Below, piece after piece: positions 1,926 to 22,882 of a DNA stretch of 64,000 nucleotides. The stretch spans positions 164,349-228,348 of IMG/VR virus record IMGVR_UViG_3300025869_002060. One strand, 5' to 3'. The notes beneath the pieces are model-generated. The model saw nothing but the letters and a program-made list of their open reading frames with translations. It was not told the origin of the DNA and made no database searches. The translations under genes were made by a program, and so were the position numbers. The first letter of the stretch is position 1; each line of letters starts with the position of its first letter.

Positions 1926-2165
1926 ATGAAGTCCGAAGTCACAGCAATATTCGACGATCTCGATCAATACCGTCAGTTTTGTGTGCAGTTTGGGAGGCCC
2001 TATAATGAACGGGATCTCTACAATAAGTCCAACAATCACTATGTTGATTTTTTGGCATTCAAGGAAGGCAAACGAATTCGTAACCACTGGAATAGCCAGT
2101 CCAAGAAGAAGCGACCGTTTGTGAAAAAGAGCAATTATAAAATGGCCAAGAGGAAACATGCGTAA
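1926..2165 (+). CDS. Hypothetical basic protein
   Basis: 79-aa ORF downstream of a promoter, overlapping the next start. Confidence 0.7.
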   Translation: MKSEVTAIFDDLDQYRQFCVQFGRPYNERDLYNKSNNHYVDFLAFKEGKRIRNHWNSQSKKKRPFVKKSNYKMAKRKHA

Positions 2166-3339
2166 ATTATTCTATATGGGTTTAGAACCCTACGAAGGTC
2201 GATACACTTTACAACTTCAAGATTGGAGCACTGAAGTGTTCGACCGCCGGGGGATTGACTATGTTGTCGTTCCCGGAACTACAATAGATGACACTAAAGC
2301 AATTAGTGTTGGGCAAGTACTAGATGCACATGGTCGTTCATACTTTGGTATGAGTCAGTTGATGAACCTGGTACAGATGATGCGAAATGGAGAATGTACT
2401 GGTGAAGATGTTGTATTCTTTGAAGACATGTTTCAGCCTGGTATGGAATCATTACCTTATATCATGTGTCAGATACCAGAAGAGCAACGACCTAAGATTT
2501 TTCTACGTTGTTTAGCCCAGGCAATTGACCCAGATGACTTTGTTCATGTATGGGGTATGAGCAAGTGGATGTCATTGTACGAACAGATGTGCAACGAAAT
2601 TCCTAATGTTCATATTCTAGCAACCAATGAAGAGATGGTTGCACACATGAAGATTGCAAACTGGACTGCTCCAATTTATAACATCTCAGGTTTGAGTTTT
2701 GGTAAAGCAGAAGTTCAAAGACGTATTGATAACAAAATTAAACCGTGGACAGAACGTAGCGACAGAGTAGTATTTGCGGCTCGCTTTGACCAAGAGAAGC
2801 AACCAGACTTCTTTATGGATGTTATTGAAATGGTCAAAGAGAAAAGGCCTGATGTTGAGTTTGCAGTACTAAGTGGTGGTCCATTGCGTAGTAATAATGA
2901 AAAGTATTTGGATCGAGCACTTGCAATGCAGGCTGAAGGTAAACTTACAATACTGAAATACTTGCAAAAGAATGATTACTACTATACAGTAAATGATAGC
3001 AAAGTATTGTTTAATTGTGCATTGCAAGACTGGGTAAGCAATACTGTAAGTGAAGCAGATGCATTGGGTTGTAACGTGGTGTATCCTGCTTACAGAAGTT
3101 TTCCTGAAACGTTTGCAAATGATTATACACGTCTGTATACTCCGTGGAGCAAAGAAGATGCAGTAAGTAAAATCATGCAAGGTCTTTTGGAACCAAGTCC
3201 TAATATGGGTAAAATCAGTAACTGGACTGATGGTACTATTGATCGTATGATTGATATTATGGAAGGCAGTTACAAACACAATACTTGGTTACGAAGTGGT
3301 AACAGGTATCGTGATCATGTAGCGGAAGGGAAATACTAA
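2158..3339 (+). CDS. GT-B fold glycosyltransferase (GT4-like)
   Basis: C-terminal domain motifs VFAARFDQEKQP and NCALQDWVSNTVSEADALGCNVVYP. Confidence 0.8.
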   Translation: MRKLFYMGLEPYEGRYTLQLQDWSTEVFDRRGIDYVVVPGTTIDDTKAISVGQVLDAHGRSYFGMSQLMNLVQMMRNGECTGEDVVFFEDMFQPGMESLPYIMCQIPEEQRPKIFLRCLAQAIDPDDFVHVWGMSKWMSLYEQMCNEIPNVHILATNEEMVAHMKIANWTAPIYNISGLSFGKAEVQRRIDNKIKPWTERSDRVVFAARFDQEKQPDFFMDVIEMVKEKRPDVEFAVLSGGPLRSNNEKYLDRALAMQAEGKLTILKYLQKNDYYYTVNDSKVLFNCALQDWVSNTVSEADALGCNVVYPAYRSFPETFANDYTRLYTPWSKEDAVSKIMQGLLEPSPNMGKISNWTDGTIDRMIDIMEGSYKHNTWLRSGNRYRDHVAEGKY

Positions 3340-3340
3340 G

Positions 3341-4339
3341 ATGCCTGAAAACACCGTATTAATTACCGGCAGTGATGGCTACGTTGGTAGCCATGTTGCT
3401 AAAGCATTTAAAGATATCAGTTGGTATGTGTGCGGTTTAGATCGCACTGGTGCAAATGAAAATGCACGTTCATACTGTAACGAGTTTTTACGTGCTGATT
3501 ACGGTGAGAGTAAGGTCGTTGGAAAGTATATTGAAACTATCAAACCAGATGTTATTGTACATTGTGCTGGTACTAGTCTAGTAGGTCCAAGTGTTACAGA
3601 TCCGCATGCCTACTATCAGAACAATGTACTTGGTACAATCAATTTATTAGACAATATAATTAACGTACAAAAAGATAATTTACCTGTTGTGCTTTTTAGT
3701 AGTTCAGCAAGTGTTTATGGCAATCCCGAACAACTTCCAATCACAGAAGATAGCAAGATCAATCCTGTAAACCCATATGGTAATACAAAGTCAATAATTG
3801 AAACCATGCTCAAAGACTATGCTAGTGCATACGGATTGAACAGTGTATCATTTCGTTTCTTTAATGCCGCTGGTGCCAGTGAAGATCTTGGTCAAGTGTT
3901 TGGTGCTACTCATATTATTGCTCGCATACTTGAAGCCAAGTTACGCCAACGACAGTTTACTTTGTATGGTACAGATTATAAAACTGAAGATGGTACTTGT
4001 GTTAGAGATTATGTACACGTAAAAGATATTGCTCAGGCACACCTAAACGCCGTTACAAAATACACAGCCGTTGGTGCCAATGCATTTAATCTTGGCACTA
4101 GCAAAGGATTCAGTAACCAAGAGATTATTGATGCGGTGGTAGAACAAATTGGCGAATTCGAAGTAGAAAAAGGACCACGCAGAGAAGGTGATCCAGATAT
4201 GCTAATAGCCAGCAGTGATAAAGCAAAAACACAACTAGGTTGGGATCCAGTAAATAGTAACTTAGACACAATTATCAATGACGTATGGGCTTGGTATAAC
4301 GTACTACTAGAGAAACAAAAAGAGCAAGAACAGGCATGA
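3341..4339 (+). CDS. galE: UDP-glucose 4-epimerase
   Basis: TGSDGYVGSH Rossmann motif, FSSSASVYG, YGNTK (YxxxK), FRFFNAAGA, GTCVRDYVHV. Confidence 0.9.
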   Translation: MPENTVLITGSDGYVGSHVAKAFKDISWYVCGLDRTGANENARSYCNEFLRADYGESKVVGKYIETIKPDVIVHCAGTSLVGPSVTDPHAYYQNNVLGTINLLDNIINVQKDNLPVVLFSSSASVYGNPEQLPITEDSKINPVNPYGNTKSIIETMLKDYASAYGLNSVSFRFFNAAGASEDLGQVFGATHIIARILEAKLRQRQFTLYGTDYKTEDGTCVRDYVHVKDIAQAHLNAVTKYTAVGANAFNLGTSKGFSNQEIIDAVVEQIGEFEVEKGPRREGDPDMLIASSDKAKTQLGWDPVNSNLDTIINDVWAWYNVLLEKQKEQEQA

Positions 4340-4929
4340 GTTTTAGTCATATACAGGAGTTTGAGGAGCAATTAGCACTATATACTGGTGCCAAGTGGGC
4401 CGTAATGACAGACACCTGTACCAATGCATTAGAACTATGTTTTAGGTACGATGAAGTTAAAGAATGCCAGTTTAGTGCATATACCTACCTAAGCATTTAT
4501 CAGTTATTACATAGATTGGATATCTCTTATACACTTACAGAAGAAGTATGGAGAGGCCAATATCATTTTGAAAATACCCGTATTTGGGATAGTGCAAGAT
4601 TACTTAAAAAGAATATGTATCAACCAGGACAATTACAATGTTTAAGTTTTGGTTATGACAAACCCTTATATCTCGGTTGGGGTGGTGCGATCCTAACCGA
4701 CGACCCGGCGTTCTACAAACATACGATTCAGCAACGTTATGACGGGCGGAACCTCTCAGTTACTCCATGGGAAACAGAAATACTTCCACGTATTGCATTC
4801 CATATGAGACCTACCCCTGAGATTGCACTAGATGGACTAGAACGATTAAGGACCGGAGATATAAGTAAACTTCCACCAAAGGCCGCTGACGAATTATATC
4901 CAAATGGAAAAGATATAAAATGGAAATAA
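4336..4929 (+). CDS. Truncated DegT/DnrJ-like PLP-dependent protein
   Basis: FEEQLALYTGAKWAV, CTNAL, WDSA, SFGYDKPL (PLP lysine) and GGAILTDD; 197 aa versus about 370-400 aa for typical DegT proteins. Confidence 0.75.
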   Translation: MSFSHIQEFEEQLALYTGAKWAVMTDTCTNALELCFRYDEVKECQFSAYTYLSIYQLLHRLDISYTLTEEVWRGQYHFENTRIWDSARLLKKNMYQPGQLQCLSFGYDKPLYLGWGGAILTDDPAFYKHTIQQRYDGRNLSVTPWETEILPRIAFHMRPTPEIALDGLERLRTGDISKLPPKAADELYPNGKDIKWK

Positions 4930-5225: not shown

Positions 5226-5924
5226 ATGAGTGAACTAATATCTAAAATTATCACAGATCGTGTAAAAGAATCAGGCGACCGCTACTGGGCTGGTGATAAT
5301 ATTTCTAAACATATCCATAACGAATACGAAAAACAAGATTTAATTAATGAAATTGCAGTAGCATTTGAAGATGTTCTTGATGCATTGGTTATTGATAGAT
5401 TCAATGACCCTAACAGTATGGATACTGCAAGACGTCTTGCTAAAATGTATATTAATGAAGTTATGAGTGGCAGGTACGACCCAATGCCTAAGGCAACAGC
5501 CTTTCCTAATCATGTAGATGATGGATACAAAGGTATGTTGGTTGTACGTTCAGAACTTAAAAGTATGTGTTCGCATCATCATCAACCAGTAAGCGGTGTT
5601 GCATACATTGGTATTATTGCCGCAGAAACACTAATTGGTCTTAGCAAGTATACACGTATTGCTCAATGGTGTGCAAGGCGAGGTACACTACAAGAAGAAC
5701 TTAATAATGTTATTGCTAACGAGATTCAAAAAGCAACAGGTAGTCCTAACATAGGTGTTTACGTTCAGGCCACTCATGGTTGTTGCGAAAACAGAGGCAT
5801 TATGGCACATAGTAGTTTAACACAAACAACTGTACTTAGAGGTGCATTTAGTGATGATCCAGGCACTAAGAAAGAGTTTATGGATAACATTAAACTGCAA
5901 CAAGAGTTTGCTTGTGGAAAATAA
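5226..5924 (+). CDS. folE: GTP cyclohydrolase I
   Basis: TARRLAKMY, SMCSHHHQP, GLSKYTRI, LQEEL, HGCCENRG; GGAG RBS. Confidence 0.95.
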   Translation: MSELISKIITDRVKESGDRYWAGDNISKHIHNEYEKQDLINEIAVAFEDVLDALVIDRFNDPNSMDTARRLAKMYINEVMSGRYDPMPKATAFPNHVDDGYKGMLVVRSELKSMCSHHHQPVSGVAYIGIIAAETLIGLSKYTRIAQWCARRGTLQEELNNVIANEIQKATGSPNIGVYVQATHGCCENRGIMAHSSLTQTTVLRGAFSDDPGTKKEFMDNIKLQQEFACGK

Positions 5925-6385
5925 AGAGCACAGTTTTTGGTGCTAGAAAGGAAGTTATGTTTTTAAAGTTACTTGATCGATTAGGTCGAAAAAGAATTGT
6001 TTACGATAGGTTGGATGACGAGCCTTATCTTGAACGTTACTATGTGTTTATTAAAGAAAGAAAACACTTTCCTTTCAATATTTTCCTACACAAATTTCTT
6101 AAAAGCGATCCAGATGATTTACACGATCATCCTTGGGGATATGCTACACTTATTCTTAAAGGTGGATATTGGGAGCATACCCCCGACGGAAAGTTTTGGA
6201 GAGGTCCCGGACATTTTAGAATGTGCAAGTCCAACAATACACACAGAATTGAACTAGACCCTGATGTTCAAGCCTGGACATTGTTTATGCCCGGACCACA
6301 AAGGAAAGACTGGGGATTTATCAAAGACGGTAAATGGATTCAACACGAAAAATATCTTTCATCTAGAAAAATGTTAAAGGAATGA
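5912..6385 (+). CDS. Cupin-fold protein
   Basis: LHDHPW...ILKGGYWE and later HRIEL cupin metal motifs. Confidence 0.7.
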   Translation: MWKIKSTVFGARKEVMFLKLLDRLGRKRIVYDRLDDEPYLERYYVFIKERKHFPFNIFLHKFLKSDPDDLHDHPWGYATLILKGGYWEHTPDGKFWRGPGHFRMCKSNNTHRIELDPDVQAWTLFMPGPQRKDWGFIKDGKWIQHEKYLSSRKMLKE

Positions 6386-6906
6386 CAATGAATAAACTCT
6401 ATATTGACGATACTCAGATTAAAAATGCATGTCATTCCATTGTAACAAAAATGTATAGAGATAACTTTAAACCTAAATACATTGTAGGAATTACACGCGG
6501 CGGGCTAGTTCCAGCTTTATACCTAAGTCATATGACTGGTATTACAATGCATACACTAGATGTTCGTTTACGTGATGGTGATGAACAAGAATCAAATCTA
6601 TGGATGGCCGAAGATGCATTTGGTTATCCTAATCAAGACAGTGGCGGACAAGGAAAAAATATTTTAATTGTAGATGATATAAATGACACTGGTGCAACGT
6701 TCAACTGGATTAAACAAGATTGGCCCTCAGGGTGCTTACCTAACGATCTTCGTTGGAATGAAGTATGGCATAACAATGTACGTTTTGCAAGTATTATTGA
6801 CAATATGGGTAGCAACTTCAAGGTTGACTATTCAGAAATTGAGATTAATAAATCCGAGGAGGATGTGTGGGTAGTATTTCCGTGGGAAGAACCTTTAAGG
6901 GTCTAG
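6382..6906 (+). CDS. Type I phosphoribosyltransferase (xanthine/guanine PRT-like)
   Basis: VGITRGGLVPA, PRPP-binding ILIVDDINDTGAT, C-terminal WVVFPWE. Confidence 0.9.
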   Translation: MTMNKLYIDDTQIKNACHSIVTKMYRDNFKPKYIVGITRGGLVPALYLSHMTGITMHTLDVRLRDGDEQESNLWMAEDAFGYPNQDSGGQGKNILIVDDINDTGATFNWIKQDWPSGCLPNDLRWNEVWHNNVRFASIIDNMGSNFKVDYSEIEINKSEEDVWVVFPWEEPLRV

Positions 6907-7109
6907 AAGGAAAATACAATGTGCATTATAACTTTGATGTGCGAGCAACTACCGATGGTGGAATTCCAGGTACGACAATTAACTGGTGTAAAGAAAATAT
7001 AACTAACGAATGGGGTTGGTACTTTGATCAAGACAATAAAGATATCGGGTACTGTACTTTTATTGATGAAAAAGACGCAATTTATTTTGCATTAAGGTAC
7101 TCAAAATAA
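6867..7109 (+). CDS. Hypothetical protein
   Basis: 80-aa ORF; W...W...F.DEKDA.YFAL pattern resembles 24101..24397. Confidence 0.6.
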   Translation: MGSISVGRTFKGLEGKYNVHYNFDVRATTDGGIPGTTINWCKENITNEWGWYFDQDNKDIGYCTFIDEKDAIYFALRYSK

Positions 7110-7678
7110 TGCTTGGATTTTATCCAAATTTTAAAATCACATGCAATGTAGATTGGACTGAACTGTCATTACGTGTCACTGACACGGCTATAAATTATGT
7201 TCACACAAACAAATACAAAGAAAATATATTATACGAAAGTGTAAACAGTATCGTAGCAAGTCTACCTACAGGTGGTTGGATAAGCAAGAGTGGTCCAAGT
7301 TTTGATTTCTTTGTAATGGGCGGAATACCCGAAACCGAAATATTAGATAATTGGTTTAAAAAACAATTTCCAAATTTAACATTTACCCCAGCAACAATTT
7401 GTTGGAGTAGTAAAAATGTTCCGTTGCACAGAGACAACATAAAGAACGGACAATCAAGTTTAGTATATCCTATATCAAATAATAGTGGATACGGAACTGT
7501 ATATAGCAACGATGCCAAGTTCACTTATGGTACCGAAAAACATAAACCTGTTGTAATCAATATAACTGTTGATCACGAGGTAGTAATTACTGAACCAAGA
7601 GTCTGGTTCAGTATTCATATGCAAGAACCAATTAAAATGGTTAAAGAAGTACTTGACAATTATGCAAATAACGTATAG
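7109..7678 (+). CDS. Putative 2OG-Fe(II) oxygenase-like protein
   Basis: PLHRD (HxD) plus distal His (VDHEV) in a beta-rich fold pattern. Confidence 0.5.
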   Translation: MLGFYPNFKITCNVDWTELSLRVTDTAINYVHTNKYKENILYESVNSIVASLPTGGWISKSGPSFDFFVMGGIPETEILDNWFKKQFPNLTFTPATICWSSKNVPLHRDNIKNGQSSLVYPISNNSGYGTVYSNDAKFTYGTEKHKPVVINITVDHEVVITEPRVWFSIHMQEPIKMVKEVLDNYANNV

Positions 7679-7706
7679 TATTAAATATTATAAAGGTGAT
7701 TTCTAA

Positions 7707-8198
7707 ATGACATACTACAGTACAAAAACATACGGACACAACATAGGACTAAGTGCAGTGTTCCGTCAACCAAATGCAGATCACTCACATTGCCATTTGT
7801 TACATGGTTATAGTTTGCAGTTTAAATTTACATTTGGTTGTTCTGAATTAGATAAAAAAAACTGGGCCGTTGACTTTGGTGGATTAAAACCACTCAAAGC
7901 ATGGCTTGAAGATAGCTTTGATCATAAGACAGCAATTGATATTGCTGATCCTCATAAACAAGAATTTTATGATTTGCAGGACAAAGACTTATGTGAAGTA
8001 AGAGAATTTGACGGGGTTGGTGCAGAGAAGTTTGCAGAACATGCATGGCGCTTTGCAGACAAACTCGTCAAAGAAATGACAAATGGACGTTGTTGGTGTG
8101 AGAGTTGTGAGTGTGCAGAACACGGGGCAAATTCTGCTATTTATTCTCCGTATGTCGTACAAAAAACCTCGTTCAAGGAGAACCATAATGAACAATAA
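7707..8198 (+). CDS. queD: 6-carboxy-5,6,7,8-tetrahydropterin synthase
   Basis: HCHLLHGY, WAVDFGGLK, FDHK, AEKFAEH, CAEHGANSA motifs. Confidence 0.9.
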   Translation: MTYYSTKTYGHNIGLSAVFRQPNADHSHCHLLHGYSLQFKFTFGCSELDKKNWAVDFGGLKPLKAWLEDSFDHKTAIDIADPHKQEFYDLQDKDLCEVREFDGVGAEKFAEHAWRFADKLVKEMTNGRCWCESCECAEHGANSAIYSPYVVQKTSFKENHNEQ

Positions 8199-8394
8199 AC
8201 TACTATTGGCATTGCAGGCAAGGTATCAAGCACAAAAGGCAGAAGGCCTTGCTAATATCGATGTCTACATGCAAAATCCAGCAGGTATTGGCGAGCATCC
8301 AGACATCACTGGTGCTATTGCTGAACAAATTGCTAAGATTGCAGAAGCAGACGATGGTTTGCTTGTGTTAGAAGAAAACTTCAGTGACAAGTAA
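8188..8394 (+). CDS. Small hypothetical phage protein
   Basis: GGAG RBS before ATG 8188 (the track start at 8083 is too far upstream); NPAGIGEHPDI motif. Confidence 0.75.
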   Translation: MNNKLLLALQARYQAQKAEGLANIDVYMQNPAGIGEHPDITGAIAEQIAKIAEADDGLLVLEENFSDK

Positions 8395-8512
8395 TACTGA
8401 CAAACAGTGGATATGCCCGGTTTGTGGGCATATCCATTATGGCGAAACTCACCCTGAGGTTGATTGCCCTATCTGTGCATTGCCTGGTGAAGAATACATT
8501 GAACAAGAATAG
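8384..8512 (+). CDS. Rubredoxin-like / zinc-ribbon micro-protein (42 aa, not in ORF track)
   Basis: Manual translation from GTG: MTSNTDKQWICPVCGHIHYGETHPEVDCPICALPGEEYIEQE; two CxxC knuckles. Confidence 0.8.
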   Translation: MTSNTDKQWICPVCGHIHYGETHPEVDCPICALPGEEYIEQE

Positions 8513-8523
8513 AAAGGCACACT

Positions 8524-9396
8524 ATGAACTGGCGTTATAGCGAAGAATTTTATAGTATACAAGGTGAAGGCAAATTTGTAGGAGTACCTAGTGTATTTTT
8601 ACGTATGTTTGGTTGCAACTTTCGTTGTAAGAACTTTGGTAGATCCAAAGACGAAACCTTTGCTAAAAACGAACCAAATCCTGAAGTGCAAGAAGTTATT
8701 GATAATATTGATCAATACGAGAATTTTGGAGATTTACCAATTGTGCATACTGGTTGCGATACGTATGCAAGTATCTATCCGCAGTTTAAACGTTTTATGA
8801 AAAATCTTAACACTGACGAGGTAGCTGAACGTTTACTAGCATTAACACCAAATGGTTCATGGACCATGCCCAATGGGCAAGATATTCATCTAATTATAAC
8901 TGGCGGAGAGCCATTGCTTGGTTGGCAAAAAAATTATGTTGAATTATTTAATCATCCGAAAATGAAAGATTTAAAAAATGTTACAATCGAAACAAATGGT
9001 ACTCAAGCTCTTAGACCGGAGTTTGTTGACTTTATCACACATCAAGAAAGAATATGTATTACTTTCTCGTGTAGCCCAAAGTTATCCGTTTCGGGAGAGT
9101 CTTGGAGTGATGCTATTAACCCTGACATTGTTAGCACTTACTATAATCTTCCTAATAGTGATTTGTATCTTAAGTTTGTGGTTAACGATGATGTGGATGT
9201 GGACGAAGTTAGCAGAGCTACTGAAGAGTATCGTGCGGCCGGGGTTGAGTGTCCAGTATATACTATGCCGCTTGGCGGACGGTATGACGAGTATAAAGCA
9301 ACGACTAAAAGGGTCGCAGAACTCGCAATGCAAAAAGGGTGGAGATATACACCCAGACTACACGTTGATATCTTCGGAAATGCATGGGGCACGTAA
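8524..9396 (+). CDS. queE: 7-carboxy-7-deazaguanine synthase (radical SAM)
   Basis: EFYSIQGEG, FLRMFGCNFRC...GCDT, ITGGEPLL, IETNGT, SPKL, PRLHVDIFG. Confidence 0.92.
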   Translation: MNWRYSEEFYSIQGEGKFVGVPSVFLRMFGCNFRCKNFGRSKDETFAKNEPNPEVQEVIDNIDQYENFGDLPIVHTGCDTYASIYPQFKRFMKNLNTDEVAERLLALTPNGSWTMPNGQDIHLIITGGEPLLGWQKNYVELFNHPKMKDLKNVTIETNGTQALRPEFVDFITHQERICITFSCSPKLSVSGESWSDAINPDIVSTYYNLPNSDLYLKFVVNDDVDVDEVSRATEEYRAAGVECPVYTMPLGGRYDEYKATTKRVAELAMQKGWRYTPRLHVDIFGNAWGT

Positions 9397-13831: not shown

Positions 13832-14626
13832 TTGAAAAAACTAACATTTATTGCCTTGGTAGGTATTCTTGGATTTGTTTCTATTAACATCTCTGGGATT
13901 AATGTGAAATCTGATCAAGCTGGACTTAATCTCAATGAAGCAAAAGCACAACAACATAATATTGGCACAGACGAACTTGTTTCTGATCAAGAAATTGCAT
14001 CAGAACATAATTGCACAGACGATGGATGTGCAGAGTTTGATGCCCAATCCAAAATTGTTGACGCAACCATATCAACAAAGAATCAGATCGAAAATGAACT
14101 ACCGGCAATCATTTATTTAACTGGTACTTCCGAACATCAATCAATGGAAGATTTAAGTGATGCAATTAATGATGAAATTAAATGCATGGCAGAAAATATT
14201 TATTGGGAAGCCCGGAATCAATCCAAACTAGGAATGATTGCAGTTGGTCGTGTTGTAGTAAATCGTGTACGTAGCAAAAACTACCCTGACACAGTATGCG
14301 GAGTAATACTGCAAGGACCAACAAGAGAGAGCTGGAAAACTCGTCAACACAAACATCTTAAAGACAGTGAAAGACGTTATTACCCAGTACGTAATAGGTG
14401 CCAATTTAGTTGGTATTGTGATGGAAAAAATGACGAAGTTCGTCGCAATGAAGGGGACATATTTACTCAAGCATGGCATATTGCCAGTGCTATTGTCCTA
14501 GACAACAGATGGGATGGTTTTATTGGTGGTGCAACTCACTATCATGCAGACTATGTAACACCATCTTGGAGACATGAACTTGTAGTTGTTAGCAAGATTG
14601 ACAACCACATTTTTTATAGACCGTAG
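13832..14626 (+). CDS. SleB/Hydrolase_2-family cell wall hydrolase
   Basis: Signal/TM N-terminus; CMAENIYWEAR, VVVNRV, TVCGVI, CQFSWYCDG, GATHYHADYVTPSW; GGAGG RBS before TTG. Confidence 0.9.
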   Translation: MKKLTFIALVGILGFVSINISGINVKSDQAGLNLNEAKAQQHNIGTDELVSDQEIASEHNCTDDGCAEFDAQSKIVDATISTKNQIENELPAIIYLTGTSEHQSMEDLSDAINDEIKCMAENIYWEARNQSKLGMIAVGRVVVNRVRSKNYPDTVCGVILQGPTRESWKTRQHKHLKDSERRYYPVRNRCQFSWYCDGKNDEVRRNEGDIFTQAWHIASAIVLDNRWDGFIGGATHYHADYVTPSWRHELVVVSKIDNHIFYRP

Positions 14627-14655
14627 TTGACAAAAGAATAAAAGTTTGCTATAGT
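14627..14655 (+). promoter_or_regulatory. Sigma70-type promoter with extended -10
   Basis: TTGACA-17nt-TATAGT, TG at -15/-14. Confidence 0.8.
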
Positions 14656-14732
14656 GTAAAAATTATAGCAAACTTTATCCTTGCTAAAGGCATTGTGCTG
14701 ATAGCAGTTTTATTGTAAAATGGAGAAACACT

Positions 14733-15758
14733 ATGAGACTTACTCGTAAACTTACCGATGTCATTGAAGAAGTTCGTATTATATTACAAACAGACTTTGA
14801 CATAACCACAGAAAAACTTAAAGCCTTAAGAGAACGTGTAGAAAAGAATGGTCACGATTATCCTATAGGAACAAACTTTATTCCGTTTAGTGAACAATGG
14901 CTTGACTATGAAGTTCAACGTGCCGCTATTCCTCAACATATTCTTAACATCATGCGAAACTACGATCCACGACTTTGTGGGCCGGCTAGTGCATGTCAAA
15001 TTGAAGGTCAAGATATAACAACCATATATGATGGACAACAAAGAAGTATTGCAACTGCCTTACTAGGATATCAAGCAGGACCTTGTAATGTTGTACGTAC
15101 CGATGATGTTGCATTTCCAAGTTATGCATTTGAGATGTTAAACGAAACTGGAGTTAAACGATTAACACCAGGAGATCTTCATCGTAATGCTTTGACTCGT
15201 TACCGGTTAGGATCACGAGAAGAAAAGAATGTTCGTGCAAGGAGTTTACAAGATCAATTTGATGATTGTGAAATTGACTTAGAAGATAAGAATACCCGAA
15301 AAGGAAATAATCGAGGTGAACACGATTACTTCTTTAGTCATTTCAATTATGCATACAAGGCAATTGATCTTGACTCAACAGGCAATGTACTCTTTAATAT
15401 ATTAAACAGTATTAAAGATGTATTTCCGTTACAAGAAGAAATTGATCAAGGTGTTTTTATTGGACTATATGAGATTGCACGTCTTGATAAAAGACAAGAG
15501 CTACCTGAAGATTGGATGAATACAGTTCTTAGGTCTGCTAAAAAACTATTTCCTTCAAGTGCAATAGTTCACAGTAAAGGTAGAATGCAATGGGGACATA
15601 TTAACCCTGGTGCTTCATGGAGTGCTCCAAGTGCAATGGCTAACTTTCTAAGAGAGATTTATTTGCTCAATGAAAGCGATTTAAACTTGCCTTATCACGG
15701 AGAAGGTGCTATAATGCAGGTTGCTACTAACCCTGAGCCTTCTTTAATTAGGAATTGA
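14733..15758 (+). CDS. ParB/Srx-superfamily protein (DGQQR type)
   Basis: LDYEVQR...YDGQQR...AFEMLNETG...LTPGDLHR. Confidence 0.65.
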   Translation: MRLTRKLTDVIEEVRIILQTDFDITTEKLKALRERVEKNGHDYPIGTNFIPFSEQWLDYEVQRAAIPQHILNIMRNYDPRLCGPASACQIEGQDITTIYDGQQRSIATALLGYQAGPCNVVRTDDVAFPSYAFEMLNETGVKRLTPGDLHRNALTRYRLGSREEKNVRARSLQDQFDDCEIDLEDKNTRKGNNRGEHDYFFSHFNYAYKAIDLDSTGNVLFNILNSIKDVFPLQEEIDQGVFIGLYEIARLDKRQELPEDWMNTVLRSAKKLFPSSAIVHSKGRMQWGHINPGASWSAPSAMANFLREIYLLNESDLNLPYHGEGAIMQVATNPEPSLIRN

Positions 15759-15759
15759 A

Positions 15760-16044
15760 ATGGAACCTAACCTTTACAAATTTACTAAGGTATTACCAAA
15801 AGCATACGATAAAGTATTGCGAGAGGCTGTATGGAGCGAAGACGAATCTGAGTTATACGATTTGTGTTATCATTATCATAACAAAGATTCAGAACGCGAT
15901 GTACAAATGGCGGCTGAACGTTTATATGATCTAATGATGGATGTTGCTAGTGTACGTCAACTTGATATGAGTCTTAATGTAGTAGAAATACTTGAAGAAG
16001 TTCGTGAAGATCTAAGGAAGGAATATCCTCAAGATGGATCTTAA
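15760..16044 (+). CDS. Acidic hypothetical protein
   Basis: 94-aa ORF between two coupled genes. Confidence 0.7.
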   Translation: MEPNLYKFTKVLPKAYDKVLREAVWSEDESELYDLCYHYHNKDSERDVQMAAERLYDLMMDVASVRQLDMSLNVVEILEEVREDLRKEYPQDGS

Positions 16045-16591
16045 AGAAAGAATAAGCAAGTTTAGGCAACCCAAGTTTGCTAATCGTAAACGTAATAAAG
16101 AGTCCTACGTAAACATTGCCAAGTATGCATATGCCAATTTAGATAGGTTGTGCAAGGAATATAATAGTACTGTAAACAATGAAGATACTGTTAAACTAAT
16201 ACGAACAGATGTCGATCAAGTACTACGAAGGTTTCACAAGTACTGTATTAAAGAACGTATTGGATCTCATTATATTGAAATAGGAGTAGACATCGATGAT
16301 GCCGAATTTGAACATATGGTTCCTAATACCGTTACTTTGGATTTGCTTTTACACAATGTTATAACTGTGACAGATGCATGTAACATGCCAACTTGTACAT
16401 TAAGCAAAGAACGACATAATTCTCTTAGAGAAAAAGGTTGGGGTAGCAAGACACCAGACATATACGAGTTTTGGAAACGTTACGAATATTGTTTTGAAGT
16501 TGATGGACAGTTTACAACGTGGGACGGAATTCCAGTTGATGTTAATCAGACTTTGCTAAAGCATCTTCAAACAGAGTCTTCATGGATTTAG
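16034..16591 (+). CDS. Putative His-Me finger (HNH-like) nuclease
   Basis: FEHMVP (EHxxP) followed by PTCTLSKERHNSL. Confidence 0.5.
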   Translation: MDLKERISKFRQPKFANRKRNKESYVNIAKYAYANLDRLCKEYNSTVNNEDTVKLIRTDVDQVLRRFHKYCIKERIGSHYIEIGVDIDDAEFEHMVPNTVTLDLLLHNVITVTDACNMPTCTLSKERHNSLREKGWGSKTPDIYEFWKRYEYCFEVDGQFTTWDGIPVDVNQTLLKHLQTESSWI

Positions 16592-17923: not shown

Positions 17924-18892
17924 TTAAGCTTCTTTAATCTTGTTAACTAGTCCGTCTGCGAACATATGATCTAGTGTGTCGTATACACTTTCAGTTTTTG
18001 CACGGAAGTCTTCCATGTCAGCTTGTGAAAGATAAACAACGTCAACATTGTCTGACTCAAGGCGTGCCTTGTTCTTTTCAATGTCTAGTAGAGCTTCGCG
18101 ACGCTCTTCTAAAGCGGCTTCTTGTGCGGCTTCTAGGAAAGCTTCTTTTAGCTCTGCATCAAATGATGCCCAAAGATCCTTATTAATTAACACTGTGGTT
18201 AAGAATAAGCTATGCTCTGTATTAATAACAGCCTTTGCAGTTTTGCTTGGCTGAATTGTTTGCTCAGAACCATATAAACGTGGGTATGTGCTTTCGCCAG
18301 CTACGATACGACCATCTCCGATAGCCGCTCCGATTTCTTCAATTAGAAGATCGCCAACAACGTCACAACCTAAGACTTTGAAAGTTTCTTTGGAAACTTC
18401 AGAGCCGGTACGTACTTTTTCTCCAGCTAGTTCAGAAAGGTTTTCAATTTTCTTACTAGAAGGTAGTACGCGGAAACCACCGGAGTAGGTAAAGCATAAT
18501 GGCTGAGCATTGGTTTTGGATGCAAAGCCGTCACGTAGATTGTCACCAATCTCGCCATCTAGTACGCGAGCAACATGATCGTGATCATTAAACAAGAAAG
18601 GCATGTCTAATGCTAGTAGATCTTTGTGGTACTGGCTACCTAGTGTAGTGGTATAAAGCTGAGTCATTTCTAGCTGACCTTCTTCAAGGTGCTTCATTAA
18701 CTCATAGCGATATTGTGTGTTAACTTGGTCAATATTATGATATTTCTTGGCATACTCGTCGCATGATAGAATTTCAATATTAATTGCGCCATCTGTCTTT
18801 TCACTGATTACTCTAGCGAAACGATTAGCGGCACGAATGAATATCTCAATTGGTTCATGTGCTAGTACCCAACGAAGTGTTCTTTTTTCCAT
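17924..18892 (-). CDS. dctP: TRAP transporter substrate-binding protein-like
   Basis: LDMPFLFNDHDH, YSGGFRVL, LAGEKVRT, NTEHSLF; GGGAG RBS supports start at ATG 18892 (MEKRTLRW). Confidence 0.85.
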   Translation of the reverse strand: MEKRTLRWVLAHEPIEIFIRAANRFARVISEKTDGAINIEILSCDEYAKKYHNIDQVNTQYRYELMKHLEEGQLEMTQLYTTTLGSQYHKDLLALDMPFLFNDHDHVARVLDGEIGDNLRDGFASKTNAQPLCFTYSGGFRVLPSSKKIENLSELAGEKVRTGSEVSKETFKVLGCDVVGDLLIEEIGAAIGDGRIVAGESTYPRLYGSEQTIQPSKTAKAVINTEHSLFLTTVLINKDLWASFDAELKEAFLEAAQEAALEERREALLDIEKNKARLESDNVDVVYLSQADMEDFRAKTESVYDTLDHMFADGLVNKIKEA

Positions 18893-19144
18893 TTTAAATA
18901 TTCTCCCGGGAATGTTAAAGATAAGCAATGTAATAACTCGATTTGGTACCATTGCTATTACTGTGCTTAGTAATATTATTTATGCTAGAAGCAGATTTAG
19001 ATACTTTTTAACTAGTATATTAAAAGGCCTTGTAATGATGGGGATCTGCTCTTTCAACTACATTTATTTATGGATAAAATATCAAAAAAATGTAATTTTT
19101 TTAGGTTTTCAATGATTTCAATAGGTTAGCACCCCATAAAAAGG

Positions 19145-20356: not shown

Positions 20357-21466
20357 ATGACTACTATTACTACTGAAAGAACTGTTACTGTACGAGACGC
20401 AAAGACTCGTTTACTTCGTTGCTTTAAAAAACAACGTCCTGTATTTTTATGGGGACCTCCGGGTGTTGGCAAATCTGAGGTTGTTAATGACCTTACTACC
20501 GAACTTGGTGGGTTTATGATTGATCTTCGTTTAGGTCAAATGGATCCTACAGATATTCGAGGTATTCCATACTTCAACAAAGAACTTGGTGTAATGGATT
20601 GGGCACCGCCAATTGATCTTCCTACTGAAGAGATGGCCGCTGAGTACCCAATGGTTACTTTGTTCTTAGACGAAATGAACAGTGCCGCACCGGCTGTACA
20701 AGCCGCTGGTTATCAGCTAATTCTTAACAGACGAATTGGCAAGTACAAATTGCCCGACAACGTTGTGATTGTTGCCGCAGGTAACCGTGAAAGTGATAAA
20801 GGTGTTACTTACAGAATGCCTAGCCCACTTGCTAATCGTTTTGTACACCTTGAAGTCCGTCCAGAATTTGAAAGCTGGTTGGAGTGGGCAGTAAACAAGA
20901 AGATCCACAAAGATGTGGTTGGTTACTTGTCTTTTGCTAAATCAGACTTGTTTGATTTTGATCCTAAGAGCCCAAGCAGAGCTTTTGCTACACCACGTAC
21001 CTGGACTTTTATGTCAGATCTTCTTGAAGACGAAGATATTGGTGTTGACGAACTTGCTGACTTAGCATCTGGTACTATTGGTGAAGGGCTCGCTATTAGG
21101 TTCATGGCTCACCGTAAGGTTGCTAAAGATATGCCTAACCCAGAAGATATTCTTTCTGGCAAGGTTAAAACAATGAAGGTTACTGAAGTTTCAGCAATGT
21201 ATGCTTTGGTTACTGGAATGTGCTACGAACTGCAAGAGCAGTTTAAGAAGCCTGAGACCAAAACAGATATGACTGAGTGGCACAAAATGGCTGATAACTT
21301 CCTTCGCTTTATGATGGACAACTTCACTACTGAGTTGGTTGTTATGGGTGCAAAGGTTTCGTTGGCTACTTACAACCTTCCGTTAATTCCTGGAAAGCTC
21401 AAGAACTTTAACGAGTTCCACGAAAGTTATGGCAAGTACATAACGAATGCGAGTGCCAAAAACTAA
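20357..21466 (+). CDS. MoxR-like AAA+ ATPase
   Basis: Walker A GPPGVGKS, Walker B LFLDEMN, VAAGNR, PLANRF. Confidence 0.9.
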   Translation: MTTITTERTVTVRDAKTRLLRCFKKQRPVFLWGPPGVGKSEVVNDLTTELGGFMIDLRLGQMDPTDIRGIPYFNKELGVMDWAPPIDLPTEEMAAEYPMVTLFLDEMNSAAPAVQAAGYQLILNRRIGKYKLPDNVVIVAAGNRESDKGVTYRMPSPLANRFVHLEVRPEFESWLEWAVNKKIHKDVVGYLSFAKSDLFDFDPKSPSRAFATPRTWTFMSDLLEDEDIGVDELADLASGTIGEGLAIRFMAHRKVAKDMPNPEDILSGKVKTMKVTEVSAMYALVTGMCYELQEQFKKPETKTDMTEWHKMADNFLRFMMDNFTTELVVMGAKVSLATYNLPLIPGKLKNFNEFHESYGKYITNASAKN

Positions 21467-21610: not shown

Positions 21611-22882
21611 ATGTCTCAGGCAAGTTCAACATTAGCAGAAAAATCTAAAGAAAAAACTGTTACAGATCCTGTTGCAGATAATAAAGCCAGAGAGATGCTG
21701 ATTACTGCTCGTGTTGGTTTGTTGCTTAAGGCACCATTCTTTGGTAACATTGCTACTAGAATGGATTTGATTAATGCAGACGATTGGTGCCCGACAGCGG
21801 CAACAGATGGCCGTCGTTTTTATTATAATTCCGCTTTTGTTAATTCACTTCCGTTGCGTCAGCTAGAGTTCTTAGTAGGACACGAAGTATTACATGCGGT
21901 ATATGATCACTGTGGTAGACGTATTGACCGTGATCCTAAGATATGGAATATTGCCGCTGACTATTGTGTGAACTCAGATCTATTAGAACAAAAAGTTGGT
22001 GAACGTATTACTGTGGTGCCAATTTTGTTTGCTCACAAATACGTTGGTTGGGCATGTGAAGGTGTATATGATGACCTTATTGAAAACTCATCTGAAGAGC
22101 AACTAAGCGAATTACTTCAGCAGGTACTTGACGAACACCTTGATGGTGATGATGGTATGGGTTCTGAAACTGATTCAAAGGATGGCAAAGGTCGTCCTAC
22201 AATGTCAGATGCTGAACGTAGACAGATACGTGATGACATTAAAGAGGCTGTTCTTAATGCGGCTGAAACTGTAGATGCTGGTGATTTGCCTAGTGGTGTT
22301 AAACGACTTATTCAAAATATGACTAAGCCAGTTATCCGTTGGCAGGATCTCATTGAGCAACAGATACAGAGTGTTATCCGCAATGATTTTTCATTCTCGA
22401 GAATCAGCCGTAAGGGTTGGCACAACGATGCAATTATGCCAGGTATGATTCCTGGAGAGCAGATTGATGTTTGTATTGCTTTTGATATGAGTGGGTCAAT
22501 TGGAGTAGAAGATGCGAGTGCCTTCCTAAGTGAGGTACAAGGTATTATGGAACAGTACACAGAATACAATATTCGTATTTGGAGTTTTGATACTGCCGTA
22601 TACAATGAGCAGATGTTTACAAGCGACAATATGAGAGATATTACTGAATATGAGCCACAAGGTGGTGGTGGTACCGACTTTATGTGTAACTGGGAATATA
22701 TGAAAGAACAAGGGATTGAACCCAAAAAATTCATTATGTTTACAGATGGTATGCCATGGGATAGTTGGGGTGATGAACACTATTGTGATACAGTATTCAT
22801 TATCAAAGGCAACGAAGATGTACAACCACCATTTGGTATTTGGGCTAGTTACGAAAAAGAAGTTAGTAAACAAGCGGCATAA
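21611..22882 (+). CDS. Zincin metallopeptidase-VWA domain protein (DUF2201-like)
   Basis: TAATDG, HEVLH (HExxH), WNIAADY; MIDAS DMSGS; GGGGTDF. Confidence 0.88.
   Translation: MSQASSTLAEKSKEKTVTDPVADNKAREMLITARVGLLLKAPFFGNIATRMDLINADDWCPTAATDGRRFYYNSAFVNSLPLRQLEFLVGHEVLHAVYDHCGRRIDRDPKIWNIAADYCVNSDLLEQKVGERITVVPILFAHKYVGWACEGVYDDLIENSSEEQLSELLQQVLDEHLDGDDGMGSETDSKDGKGRPTMSDAERRQIRDDIKEAVLNAAETVDAGDLPSGVKRLIQNMTKPVIRWQDLIEQQIQSVIRNDFSFSRISRKGWHNDAIMPGMIPGEQIDVCIAFDMSGSIGVEDASAFLSEVQGIMEQYTEYNIRIWSFDTAVYNEQMFTSDNMRDITEYEPQGGGGTDFMCNWEYMKEQGIEPKKFIMFTDGMPWDSWGDEHYCDTVFIIKGNEDVQPPFGIWASYEKEVSKQAA

What the first reader, a model, noticed from the sequence alone, without database searches (positions are those of the whole stretch)
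14627..16591. Promoter-driven three-gene unit with DGQQR and EHxxP motifs: split GmrSD/SspE-like module in a phage
One strong promoter precedes a ParB-like protein with YDGQQR, a 94-aa acidic ORF and a protein with FEHMVP (seen). DGQQR (DUF262) plus EHxxP (DUF1524 HNH) is the signature of the modification-sensing nucleases GmrSD and SspE (established). In a phage that probably modifies its own DNA, this could discriminate self from host or competitor DNA, with the small acidic ORF as regulator or inhibitor (inference). The ParB-like protein may instead belong to a different DGQHR-type family.
Basis: partly seen in the sequence, partly recalled or inferred. Interest (0 to 1): 0.6.

Follow-up and report, generated by a model that had tools for sequence, protein, structure and literature searches.

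The report
Conserved ParB-like plus EHxxP phage gene pair
A clade of marine and freshwater jumbo phages always carries two adjacent genes, a ParB-like DGQQR protein and a small EHxxP protein. Together they look like a split GmrSD-type nuclease, but the acidic gene between them here is a passenger, in a slot that homing endonuclease genes occupy in other phages.

Summary
The sequence features are real: a near-consensus promoter, three coupled ORFs (341, 94 and 185 aa), YDGQQR and FEHMVP.

The conserved unit is two genes, not three.
- In 80 of 80 related viral loci the 185-aa homologue lies downstream of the 341-aa homologue on the same strand.
- It is directly adjacent in 31 loci. In 49 it is separated by unrelated inserts, several of them homing endonucleases.
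- The acidic ORF occurs only in this lineage and changes position.

P1 is a ParB/Srx-fold protein with all three motifs shared by GmrS and the DndB/DpdB "DGQHR" proteins. It is as close to DGQHR proteins (hhalign 70%) as to GmrSD_N (59.5%). No curated profile reaches its threshold.

P3 is a new family of about 137 clusters, almost all viral. Its link to DUF1524 is weak but in register. Fold searches gave no significant His-Me match.

The phage also encodes FolE, QueD and QueE, but I found no DpdA.

Best reading is a split GmrSD/SspE-like NTPase plus nuclease, at moderate confidence. A conserved leader hairpin precedes P1. I class it as a new variant of a known kind.

The parts
14627..14655 (+). 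Sigma-70-type promoter, TTGACA-17-TATAGT with an extended -10 TG
   Evidence: 11 of 12, the best site in the region. A promoter at an equivalent position occurs in 38 of 69 distinct related loci. No transcription start was shown experimentally.
14689..14699 (+). Leader hairpin 1, with apex A-T[T/G/A]G-T on a GC stem (GGCA-TTG-TGCT)
   Evidence: In 28 related leaders 90.9% of cells pair, against 66.5% in shuffles (0 of 500 reach it). The covariation score is 0.59 against 0.195, and slid controls stay at or below 0.21. Five of 6 pairs show compensatory changes, and one pair has 6 G-U. GCATNGTGC occurs in the window only here plus one chance-level hit.
14707..14721 (+). Leader hairpin 2 (GTTTTA-TTG-TAAAAT), directly before the GGAG ribosome-binding site at 14722-14725
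   Evidence: A second hairpin with a T(T/A)G apex lies at the same place in the five nearest relatives (L027, L029, L031, L034, L035), and their stems differ.
14733..15758 (+). P1, 341 aa: a ParB/Srx-fold domain (residues about 45-141) with QR (62-63), DGQQR (100-104) and FxxxN (133-137), followed by an all-helical C-terminal domain without EHxxP
15760..16044 (+). P2, 94 aa, acidic (pI 4.5): a lineage-specific passenger ORF in the P1|P3 slot
   Evidence: Only 4 database relatives were found. It lies between P1 and P3 here and in the 72% relative, where a further 56-aa ORF joins it. It lies after P3 in the 57% relatives. It is absent from the other related loci. No family matches it.
16034..16591 (+). 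P3, 185 aa: a helical hairpin (22-74), then a core with strand-EH(93-94)xxP, two short helices, a strand (120-124) and a helix carrying D/H128. Y80, H94 and H177 are invariant.
   Evidence: The model has pLDDT 94. The family has 137 clusters at 50% identity, almost all about 180 aa and stand-alone. hhalign to GmrSD_C is in register, with score 23-24 against 8-20 for other pairs. A GmrSD_C HMM hits the family members P0199, P0245 and P0275.

Best explanation
P1 and P3 form a conserved two-gene module of a clade of uncultured marine and freshwater jumbo phages (complete relatives are 337-374 kb). I read it as a split GmrSD/SspE-like enzyme.

- P1 is the nucleotide-binding, DNA-sensing subunit. 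It is a ParB/Srx fold of the DGQ(Q/H)R kind with a helical domain that lacks a nuclease motif.
- P3 supplies, in trans, a DUF1524-like His-Me active site: E93-H94 on the first strand and D/H128 on the following helix.
- Both genes are transcribed from an early, host-type promoter. A leader carries a conserved hairpin that probably sets the level of expression.
- The 94-aa acidic ORF is not part of the module.

What is shown and what is inferred:
- Shown: fold and motifs of P1; family-wide conservation of EHxxP in P3; strict synteny; hairpin covariation.
- Inferred: that P3 is a nuclease; that the two proteins act together; that the target is non-self DNA (host or rival phage) while the phage's own DNA is spared, perhaps by a 7-deazaguanine base.
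For: Synteny:
- In 80 of 80 IMG/VR loci P3 follows P1 on the same strand, 31 of them within 0-30 nt.
- The pairing holds in a deep branch at 27% and 20% identity (L170).
- Gene order equals the domain order of GmrSD.

P1:
- It has the ParB/Srx fold.
- It carries the three motifs that PMC4619093 lists for GmrS and DGQHR domains.
- hhalign gives 59.5% to GmrSD_N and 70% to DGQHR. The known pair GmrSD_N against DGQHR gives 84%, and unrelated pairs 0.7% or less.
- P1 is the best of 917 ORFs for a GmrSD_N HMM, E 0.002 against 0.71 for the next.

P3:
- EHxxP is conserved across the family.
- hhalign to 23-49 real GmrSD_C domains aligns EHxxP to EHxxP, strand LSK to LTLL, and D/H128 to the catalytic N. 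The score is 24.4, against 11.3 +/- 2.0 (maximum 17.2) in 100 column shuffles.
- A GmrSD_C HMM hits P0199 at E 1e-5, P0245 at 2e-4 and P0275 at 5e-4 among 104 family members. The best reversed-sequence null is 0.19.
- P3's weak Foldseek rows include Cas9, 4H9D, Endonuclease I and seven viral HNH proteins. These are the templates reported for GmrD.
Against: - No curated model reaches its threshold. Pfam, NCBIfam and PADLOC gave nothing for P1, and nothing meaningful for P3.
- The window's own P3 is not hit by the GmrSD_C HMM, and hhalign probability is only 2.6-5%.
- The whole-chain fold searches of P3 (PDB Foldseek, two VIA searches, Atlas, BFVD) gave no significant His-Me match. The helical hairpin dominated the VIA rows, and the core could not be folded alone.
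- The first N of E/D-H-N-N (N117) is not conserved in the wider family.
- The Arg of DGQQR is not invariant.
- A core, highly conserved gene pair flanking a homing-endonuclease slot is unusual for a defence-type gene.
- No fusion of P1 with P3 was seen among 137 clusters.
Confidence: 0.45

Rival explanations
1. P1 is a DpdB/DndB-like ATPase that serves DNA modification, not restriction. It would help insert or control a 7-deazaguanine base made by the phage's FolE-QueD-QueE genes. P3 would be an accessory factor or a still unrecognised partner enzyme.
For: - The best profile match of P1 is to TIGR03187-type proteins: 70%, 137 columns, DGQQR on DGQHR.
- FolE, QueD and QueE lie at window 5226-9396.
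- FolE is present in 5 of 5 complete relatives, and none has a PF01702 TGT.
Against: - No DpdA of any known kind was found: PF01702, DUF6610, and the phiST DpdA3 as query.
- FolE and P1 are 73-82 kb apart in three complete relatives, so linkage is not conserved.
- NCBIfam DGQHR and DndB models do not hit P1.
- According to PMC10164549, DpdB lacks EHxxP because it is not a nuclease. Here a partner with EHxxP is always present.
Confidence: 0.2
2. P1 is a KorB/ParB-like DNA clamp or repressor. It would load at the inverted repeats in its own leader and autoregulate the operon. P3 would be a non-catalytic partner.
For: - KorB, Noc and ParB are the best structural matches, some over 170-190 residues.
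- One or two inverted repeats lie between the promoter and the start codon in most relatives.
- DndB is described as an autoregulator in the reference list of PMC10164549.
Against: - The repeats keep pairing through G-U (6 sequences at one pair) and have an asymmetric 3-nt centre. That fits RNA better than a DNA palindrome.
- There is no genome-wide excess of the motif, so it is not parS-like.
- The ParB GxxRxxA box is replaced by DGQQR.
- This reading does not explain the invariant EH and H177 of P3.
Confidence: 0.1
3. One reading: a three-gene unit in which the acidic 94-aa protein regulates or inhibits the nuclease.
For: - P2 is acidic and translationally coupled on both sides here.
- A 72% homologue also lies between P1 and P3.
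Against: - P2 is absent from the other related loci.
- It lies after P3 in L020-L022.
- The slot holds at least 9 unrelated ORF clusters elsewhere.
- 31 loci have no insert at all.
Confidence: 0.07

Closest known systems
GmrSD / BrxU / SspE (DUF262 + DUF1524 type IV restriction and phosphorothioate-sensing nucleases)
   Same: - A ParB/Srx domain with QR, DGQQR and FxxxN comes first.
- An EHxxP unit followed by a strand and a helix with a metal-ligand-type residue comes second.
- The order is the same.
   Different: - Two polypeptides instead of one, with no fusion seen.
- P1 lacks the roughly 100-residue insert between DGQQR and FxxxN.
- Neither Pfam model hits.
- The last N of E/D-H-N-N is D or H, and the first N is not conserved family-wide.
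- It is encoded as a core gene pair of phages, not in bacterial defence islands.
DpdB and DndB (DGQHR domain, TIGR03187/PF14072)
   Same: - Stand-alone proteins of about 350-390 aa.
- ParB fold with DGQ(Q/H)R and compact spacing to FxxxN.
- Helical C-terminal domain without EHxxP.
- Best profile match of P1.
   Different: - No dpd or dnd partner genes were found.
- Curated models do not hit P1.
- A partner with EHxxP is always present.
ParB / KorB / Noc CTPase clamps
   Different: The GxxRxxA box is replaced by DGQQR. No ParA partner or parS-like repeats were found. The helical C-domain has no significant match.
Free-standing homing endonuclease slots between conserved genes of T-even phages (my own knowledge)
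   Same: Unrelated HNH, EndoVII-like and other endonuclease ORFs occupy one intergenic junction between two highly conserved genes.
   Different: The flanking genes here are the P1/P3 pair. Target sites and mobility were not tested.

Membership tests
GmrS / DUF262 (PF03235) | ParB/Srx fold | tested here: met
GmrS / DUF262 (PF03235) | QR pair, (I/V)DGQQR and FxxxN motifs (PMC4619093) | tested here: met
   VQR at 61-63, YDGQQR at 99-104, FEMLN at 133-137. QR and FxxxN are invariant in 28 sequences. The last two residues of DGQQR vary.
GmrS / DUF262 (PF03235) | Match to the curated Pfam model at or above its threshold | tested here: not met
   no hit at E up to 1. Only hhalign at 59.5% and a home-made HMM at E 0.002.
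GmrD / DUF1524 (PF07510) | E/D-H-N-N catalytic residues of a His-Me finger | tested here: inconclusive
   E93 and H94 are conserved. N117 is at least 90% conserved only in the close family. Position 128 is D or H, and N in a few members.
GmrD / DUF1524 (PF07510) | Match to the curated Pfam model | tested here: not met
   no hit for P3, for ten divergent members, or anywhere in the 228-kb record.
GmrD / DUF1524 (PF07510) | Beta-beta-alpha metal-finger fold | tested here: inconclusive
   The secondary-structure order fits. No fold search gave a significant match, only weak HNH, Cas9 and Endonuclease I rows.
GmrSD system | Both parts present together (fused or adjacent) | tested here: met
   80 of 80 loci, plus L170.
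GmrSD system | NTP-stimulated cleavage of modified DNA | not testable with these tools
   Needs biochemistry.
DGQHR domain proteins (DndB/DpdB, TIGR03187) | Match to the curated model | tested here: not met
   no NCBIfam hit at E up to 1. hhalign to 21 real members (the two proteins of about 790 aa were left out) gives 70%, E 4e-5, 137 columns.
DGQHR domain proteins (DndB/DpdB, TIGR03187) | Architecture: ParB fold, then a helical domain without EHxxP, about 350-400 aa | tested here: met
   and PMC10164549.
Dpd 7-deazaguanine DNA modification system | A DpdA transglycosylase in the same genome | tested here: not met
   none in the record (65% complete), and no PF01702 match in 5 complete relatives. 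Divergent DpdA kinds could be missed.
Canonical ParB | GxxRxxA arginine box | tested here: not met
   DGQQR stands in its place.
Classical HNH (PF01844/PF13392) | Pfam match or HNH motif with a zinc-binding Cys pair | tested here: not met
   no Pfam hit, and hhalign to two HNH clusters gives 0.1% or less.

The most novel reading that the evidence does not exclude
These jumbo phages make a 7-deazaguanine precursor but have no recognisable DpdA. The P1-P3 pair could be the DNA-level machinery that works with that base. One version is a new ATP-driven insertion system. The other is an offensive type IV-like nuclease that destroys unmodified host or rival DNA while the phage's own deazaguanine DNA is immune. 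That second version would be a phage-side mirror image of GmrSD.
Probability: 0.15. Interest if true: 0.8.

Novelty: new variant of a known kind. Interest (0 to 1): 0.55.

Why it matters
GmrSD, SspE and BrxU are bacterial weapons against modified phage DNA. A split relative kept as a core gene pair by a whole clade of ocean and lake jumbo phages would show the same toolkit used from the phage side. It would also define two protein families that no curated library covers: P1 with more than 1000 database clusters, and P3 with about 137 clusters at 50% identity.

The module comes with two testable extras:
- a covarying leader hairpin;
- a recurrent landing slot for homing endonuclease genes.

It also bears on an open point. 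These phages carry FolE, QueD and QueE but no known DpdA.

Tried and rejected
- **Complex prediction.** Complex prediction on P1+P3 gave no verdict (score 0.00). It is not evidence either way.
- **Sequence against PDB.** Profiles of both families found nothing.
- **Cultured phages.** INPHARED gave no DNA or protein match for P1, P3, or two divergent P3 members.
- **Curated libraries.** PADLOC and NCBIfam found nothing.
- **BrxU as a single sequence.** hhalign was uninformative.
- **DpdA.** PF01702, DUF6610 and phiST DpdA3 as queries found nothing.
- **DUF6551.** No match in 301 bacterial genomes and none in the controls, so this is uninformative.
- **Rfam on the leader.** Only chance-level rows.
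- **Leader motif as a multi-copy site.** Rejected: 15+10 hairpins genome-wide against about 8 per strand in shuffles, and none clustered.
- **Transcription.** Contigs from three metatranscriptome runs cover genes and spacers of both strands evenly, so they do not prove transcription or give ends.
- **Covariance model of the hairpin.** Not built, because a 15-nt motif would not give usable E-values.

Full report
**Where the window lies.** It is the last 64 kb of a 228-kb IMG/VR virus record that CheckV rates 65% complete. Near-identical DNA occurs in marine metagenomes of at least ten studies. Related contigs reach 317-374 kb. Five of them are 99-100% complete and two have terminal repeats. So this is an uncultured aquatic jumbo phage. 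It has no relative in the INPHARED collection at the level of these genes.

- The promoter TTGACA-17-TATAGT, with TG before the -10, lies at 14627-14655 (11 of 12).
- P1 is 14733-15758, P2 is 15760-16044 and P3 is 16034-16591. They are tightly coupled: a 1-nt spacer, then an 11-nt overlap.
- YDGQQR is P1 residues 99-104. FEHMVP is P3 residues 92-97.
- P2 is acidic, pI 4.5.

**The unit is two genes, not three.**
- A profile search of IMG/VR returned 80 loci with a P1 homologue at 52-100% identity. In all 80, a P3 homologue (HMM E mostly 1e-57 to 1e-101; 6e-16 for one copy cut by its contig end) lies downstream on the same strand.
- In 31 loci the two genes are 0-30 nt apart, often with overlapping stop and start. 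In 49 loci a gap of 279-1130 nt separates them.
- The gap ORFs fall into at least nine unrelated clusters.
- PHROGs names several of them: HNH endonuclease (phrog_14736), endonuclease/endonuclease VII (phrog_3322, phrog_1035, E to 1e-24), homing endonuclease (phrog_655, E 3e-44) and endonuclease (phrog_681). Pfam gives weak HNH hits.
- So the P1|P3 junction is a recurrent landing slot for free-standing homing endonuclease genes.
- The window's P2 is one more occupant. It has four database relatives.
- In the 72% relative it shares the slot with a further 56-aa ORF. In the 57% relatives it lies after P3. It is absent elsewhere.
- The pairing of P1 and P3 also holds in a deep branch. In L170 a 390-aa protein matches the P1 profile at 99.6% (27% identity, motif DGQHG). 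It overlaps the start of a P3 member with 20% identity to the window's.
- At the deepest level the pairing is not universal. One P3-like gene follows a DUF2201 gene instead, although that contig ends just after it.

**P1.** No Pfam, NCBIfam or PADLOC model hits it. PHROG 1033 "ParB-like" hits at E 7e-4.
- The AlphaFold model (pLDDT 89.9) has a beta/alpha domain at residues 45-141 and then helices.
- In an exhaustive alignment against 48,161 PDB chains the eight best are all ParB/Srx proteins: KorB 8.5, PadC 8.3, sulfiredoxins 7.5 and 7.2, pNOB8 ParB 6.6, serine kinase 6.5, Atu1540 5.8 and SbnI 5.7. Everything else scores 5.3 or less.
- Machnicka et al. (PMC4619093) define GmrS and the DGQHR domain by a QR pair, DGQ(Q/H)R and FxxxN. 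P1 has all three. QR and FxxxN are invariant, while the pentapeptide varies in its last two positions.
- I collected real family members from bacterial genomes and ran hhalign:
  - P1 against GmrSD_N: 59.5%, core FEmLNETGvkkLtPgDlHRN on FEtlNxRGxxLsxxDLLKN;
  - P1 against TIGR03187-type proteins: 70%, 137 columns, with DGQQR on DGQHR;
  - the known pair GmrSD_N against DGQHR: 84%;
  - ten unrelated pairs: 0.7% or less.
- Column-shuffle nulls never reached the observed score, 0 of 100.
- A GmrSD_N HMM ranks P1 first among all 917 ORFs of the record, E 0.002 against 0.71 for the next.
- P1 is therefore a new family inside the DGQ(Q/H)R branch of ParB/Srx proteins. It is not assignable to GmrS rather than to DndB/DpdB.

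**P3.** No library hits it.
- The full HMMER scan of 1.84 billion representatives found 137 clusters. Nearly all are about 180-200 aa and stand-alone, and none is fused to P1.
- The ESM Atlas clusters are 78-98% viral.
- The model (pLDDT 94) has a long helical hairpin, then strand-EH-xxP, two short helices, a strand and a helix.
- Across 44 members down to 17% identity, Y80, H94 and H177 are invariant. R65, E93, P97, P119, R149 and Y150 are at least 90% conserved. Position 128 on the helix after the second strand is almost always D or H.
- That is the layout of a His-Me finger. It is in register with DUF1524: hhalign aligns EHxxP to EHxxP, LSK to LTLL, and D/H128 to the catalytic N.
  - The score is 23-24 (probability 2.6-5%).
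  - Shuffles give 11.3 +/- 2.0 and unrelated pairs 8-20.
  - With these small alignments even known His-Me families score only 8-16 against each other.
- A GmrSD_C HMM run without filters hits three divergent P3 members at E 1e-5 to 5e-4, in the same register. The best reversed null is 0.19.
- The limits are clear:
  - the window's own P3 is not hit;
  - Pfam PF07510 hits none of eleven members tried;
  - no fold search gives a significant His-Me match.
- Among the weak Foldseek rows are Cas9, 4H9D, Endonuclease I and seven viral HNH proteins. The same templates were reported for GmrD.
- I put the chance that P3 is a DUF1524-like His-Me protein at about 0.6.

**Context.**
- FolE (5226-5924), QueD (7707-8198) and a QueE-like radical SAM enzyme (8524-9396), with a phosphoribosyltransferase among them, lie 5-9 kb upstream.
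- All five complete relatives have FolE and none has a PF01702 TGT.
- DUF6610 and phiST DpdA3 also find nothing in the record.
- In three relatives FolE lies 73-82 kb from P1, so there is no conserved linkage.
- Whether the phage modifies its DNA remains open.

**Leader.** Between the promoter and the start codon, most relatives carry one or two hairpins with the apex A-T[T/G/A]G-T on a GC-rich stem that covaries.
- On 28 leaders, 90.9% of cells pair against 66.5% in shuffles. The covariation score is 0.59 against 0.195, and slid controls stay at or below 0.21. Five of six pairs show double changes and one pair has six G-U.
- The motif is not repeated elsewhere in the genome, and Rfam has nothing like it.
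- It is most simply an RNA operator or processing site for this operon. A DNA operator for P1 is a weaker alternative.

**Verdict.** The best-supported reading is a split, phage-borne GmrSD/SspE-like pair (confidence 0.45). A DpdB-like modification role for P1 is the main rival (0.2). The middle gene is a passenger. These are new families and a new arrangement of a known kind.

Noticed in passing
P1|P3 junction: window 15759-16033; for example L040:5043-5447, L054:2829-3392, L057:3466-3819, L067:5044-6033, L080:5007-5552: In 49 of 80 related loci the gap between the two conserved genes holds unrelated ORFs. At least four clusters are homing-type endonucleases (HNH, EndoVII-like, phrog_655). 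The junction is a recurrent landing slot for mobile endonuclease genes.
   Followed up: partly
window 14689-14699 and 14707-14721: Conserved, covarying hairpin or hairpins with apex AT(T/G/A)GT in the 5' leader of P1. They are found in most relatives and nowhere else in the genome. No Rfam family matches.
   Followed up: partly
window 5226-9396: FolE, a phosphoribosyltransferase, QueD and a QueE-like enzyme form a 7-deazaguanine precursor cluster. No QueC was recognised among the ORFs scanned, and no DpdA in the record. Five complete relatives also have FolE but no PF01702 TGT.
   Followed up: partly
window 17924-18952 (-), 20357-21466 (+), 21611-22882 (+): A DctP-type TRAP solute-binding protein and a MoxR-like AAA ATPase with a DUF2201 metallopeptidase/VWA protein lie next to the module. 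In a distant marine contig (L172) a P3-like gene directly follows a DUF2201 gene.
   Followed up: no
window 13832-14626 (+): A SleB-type cell wall hydrolase (PF07486) with a hydrophobic N-terminus lies directly upstream. It keeps this place in several relatives (L006, L020).
   Followed up: no
window 2158-4929: A group 1 glycosyltransferase, a nucleotide-sugar epimerase and a DegT-type aminotransferase fragment form a sugar-modification cluster of unknown target.
   Followed up: no
window 15102-15148: In the laid contigs this stretch (the FEMLNETG coding part of P1) collects extra short contigs with unlike flanks from relatives. It is the most conserved DNA of the module.
   Followed up: no
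L104, L105, L106, L107 (genome contigs): P1 homologues at 53-56% identity sit on contigs binned into MAGs named Haliscomenobacter, Chitinophagales, Polynucleobacter and a deltaproteobacterium. These are probably phage contigs caught in bins, and at best a weak host hint.
   Followed up: no
G000:C1:127336-128235 (-), outside the window: A second ORF of the phage record gives a weak match (E 0.064) to the home-made DGQHR HMM. It may be another ParB-like protein.
   Followed up: no
L170:2339-4112: The deep-branch P1/P3 pair (motif DGQHG) lies between a polysaccharide deacetylase and a CTP-synthase-like gene plus a DNA ligase. That is a nucleotide and DNA metabolism neighbourhood.
   Followed up: no
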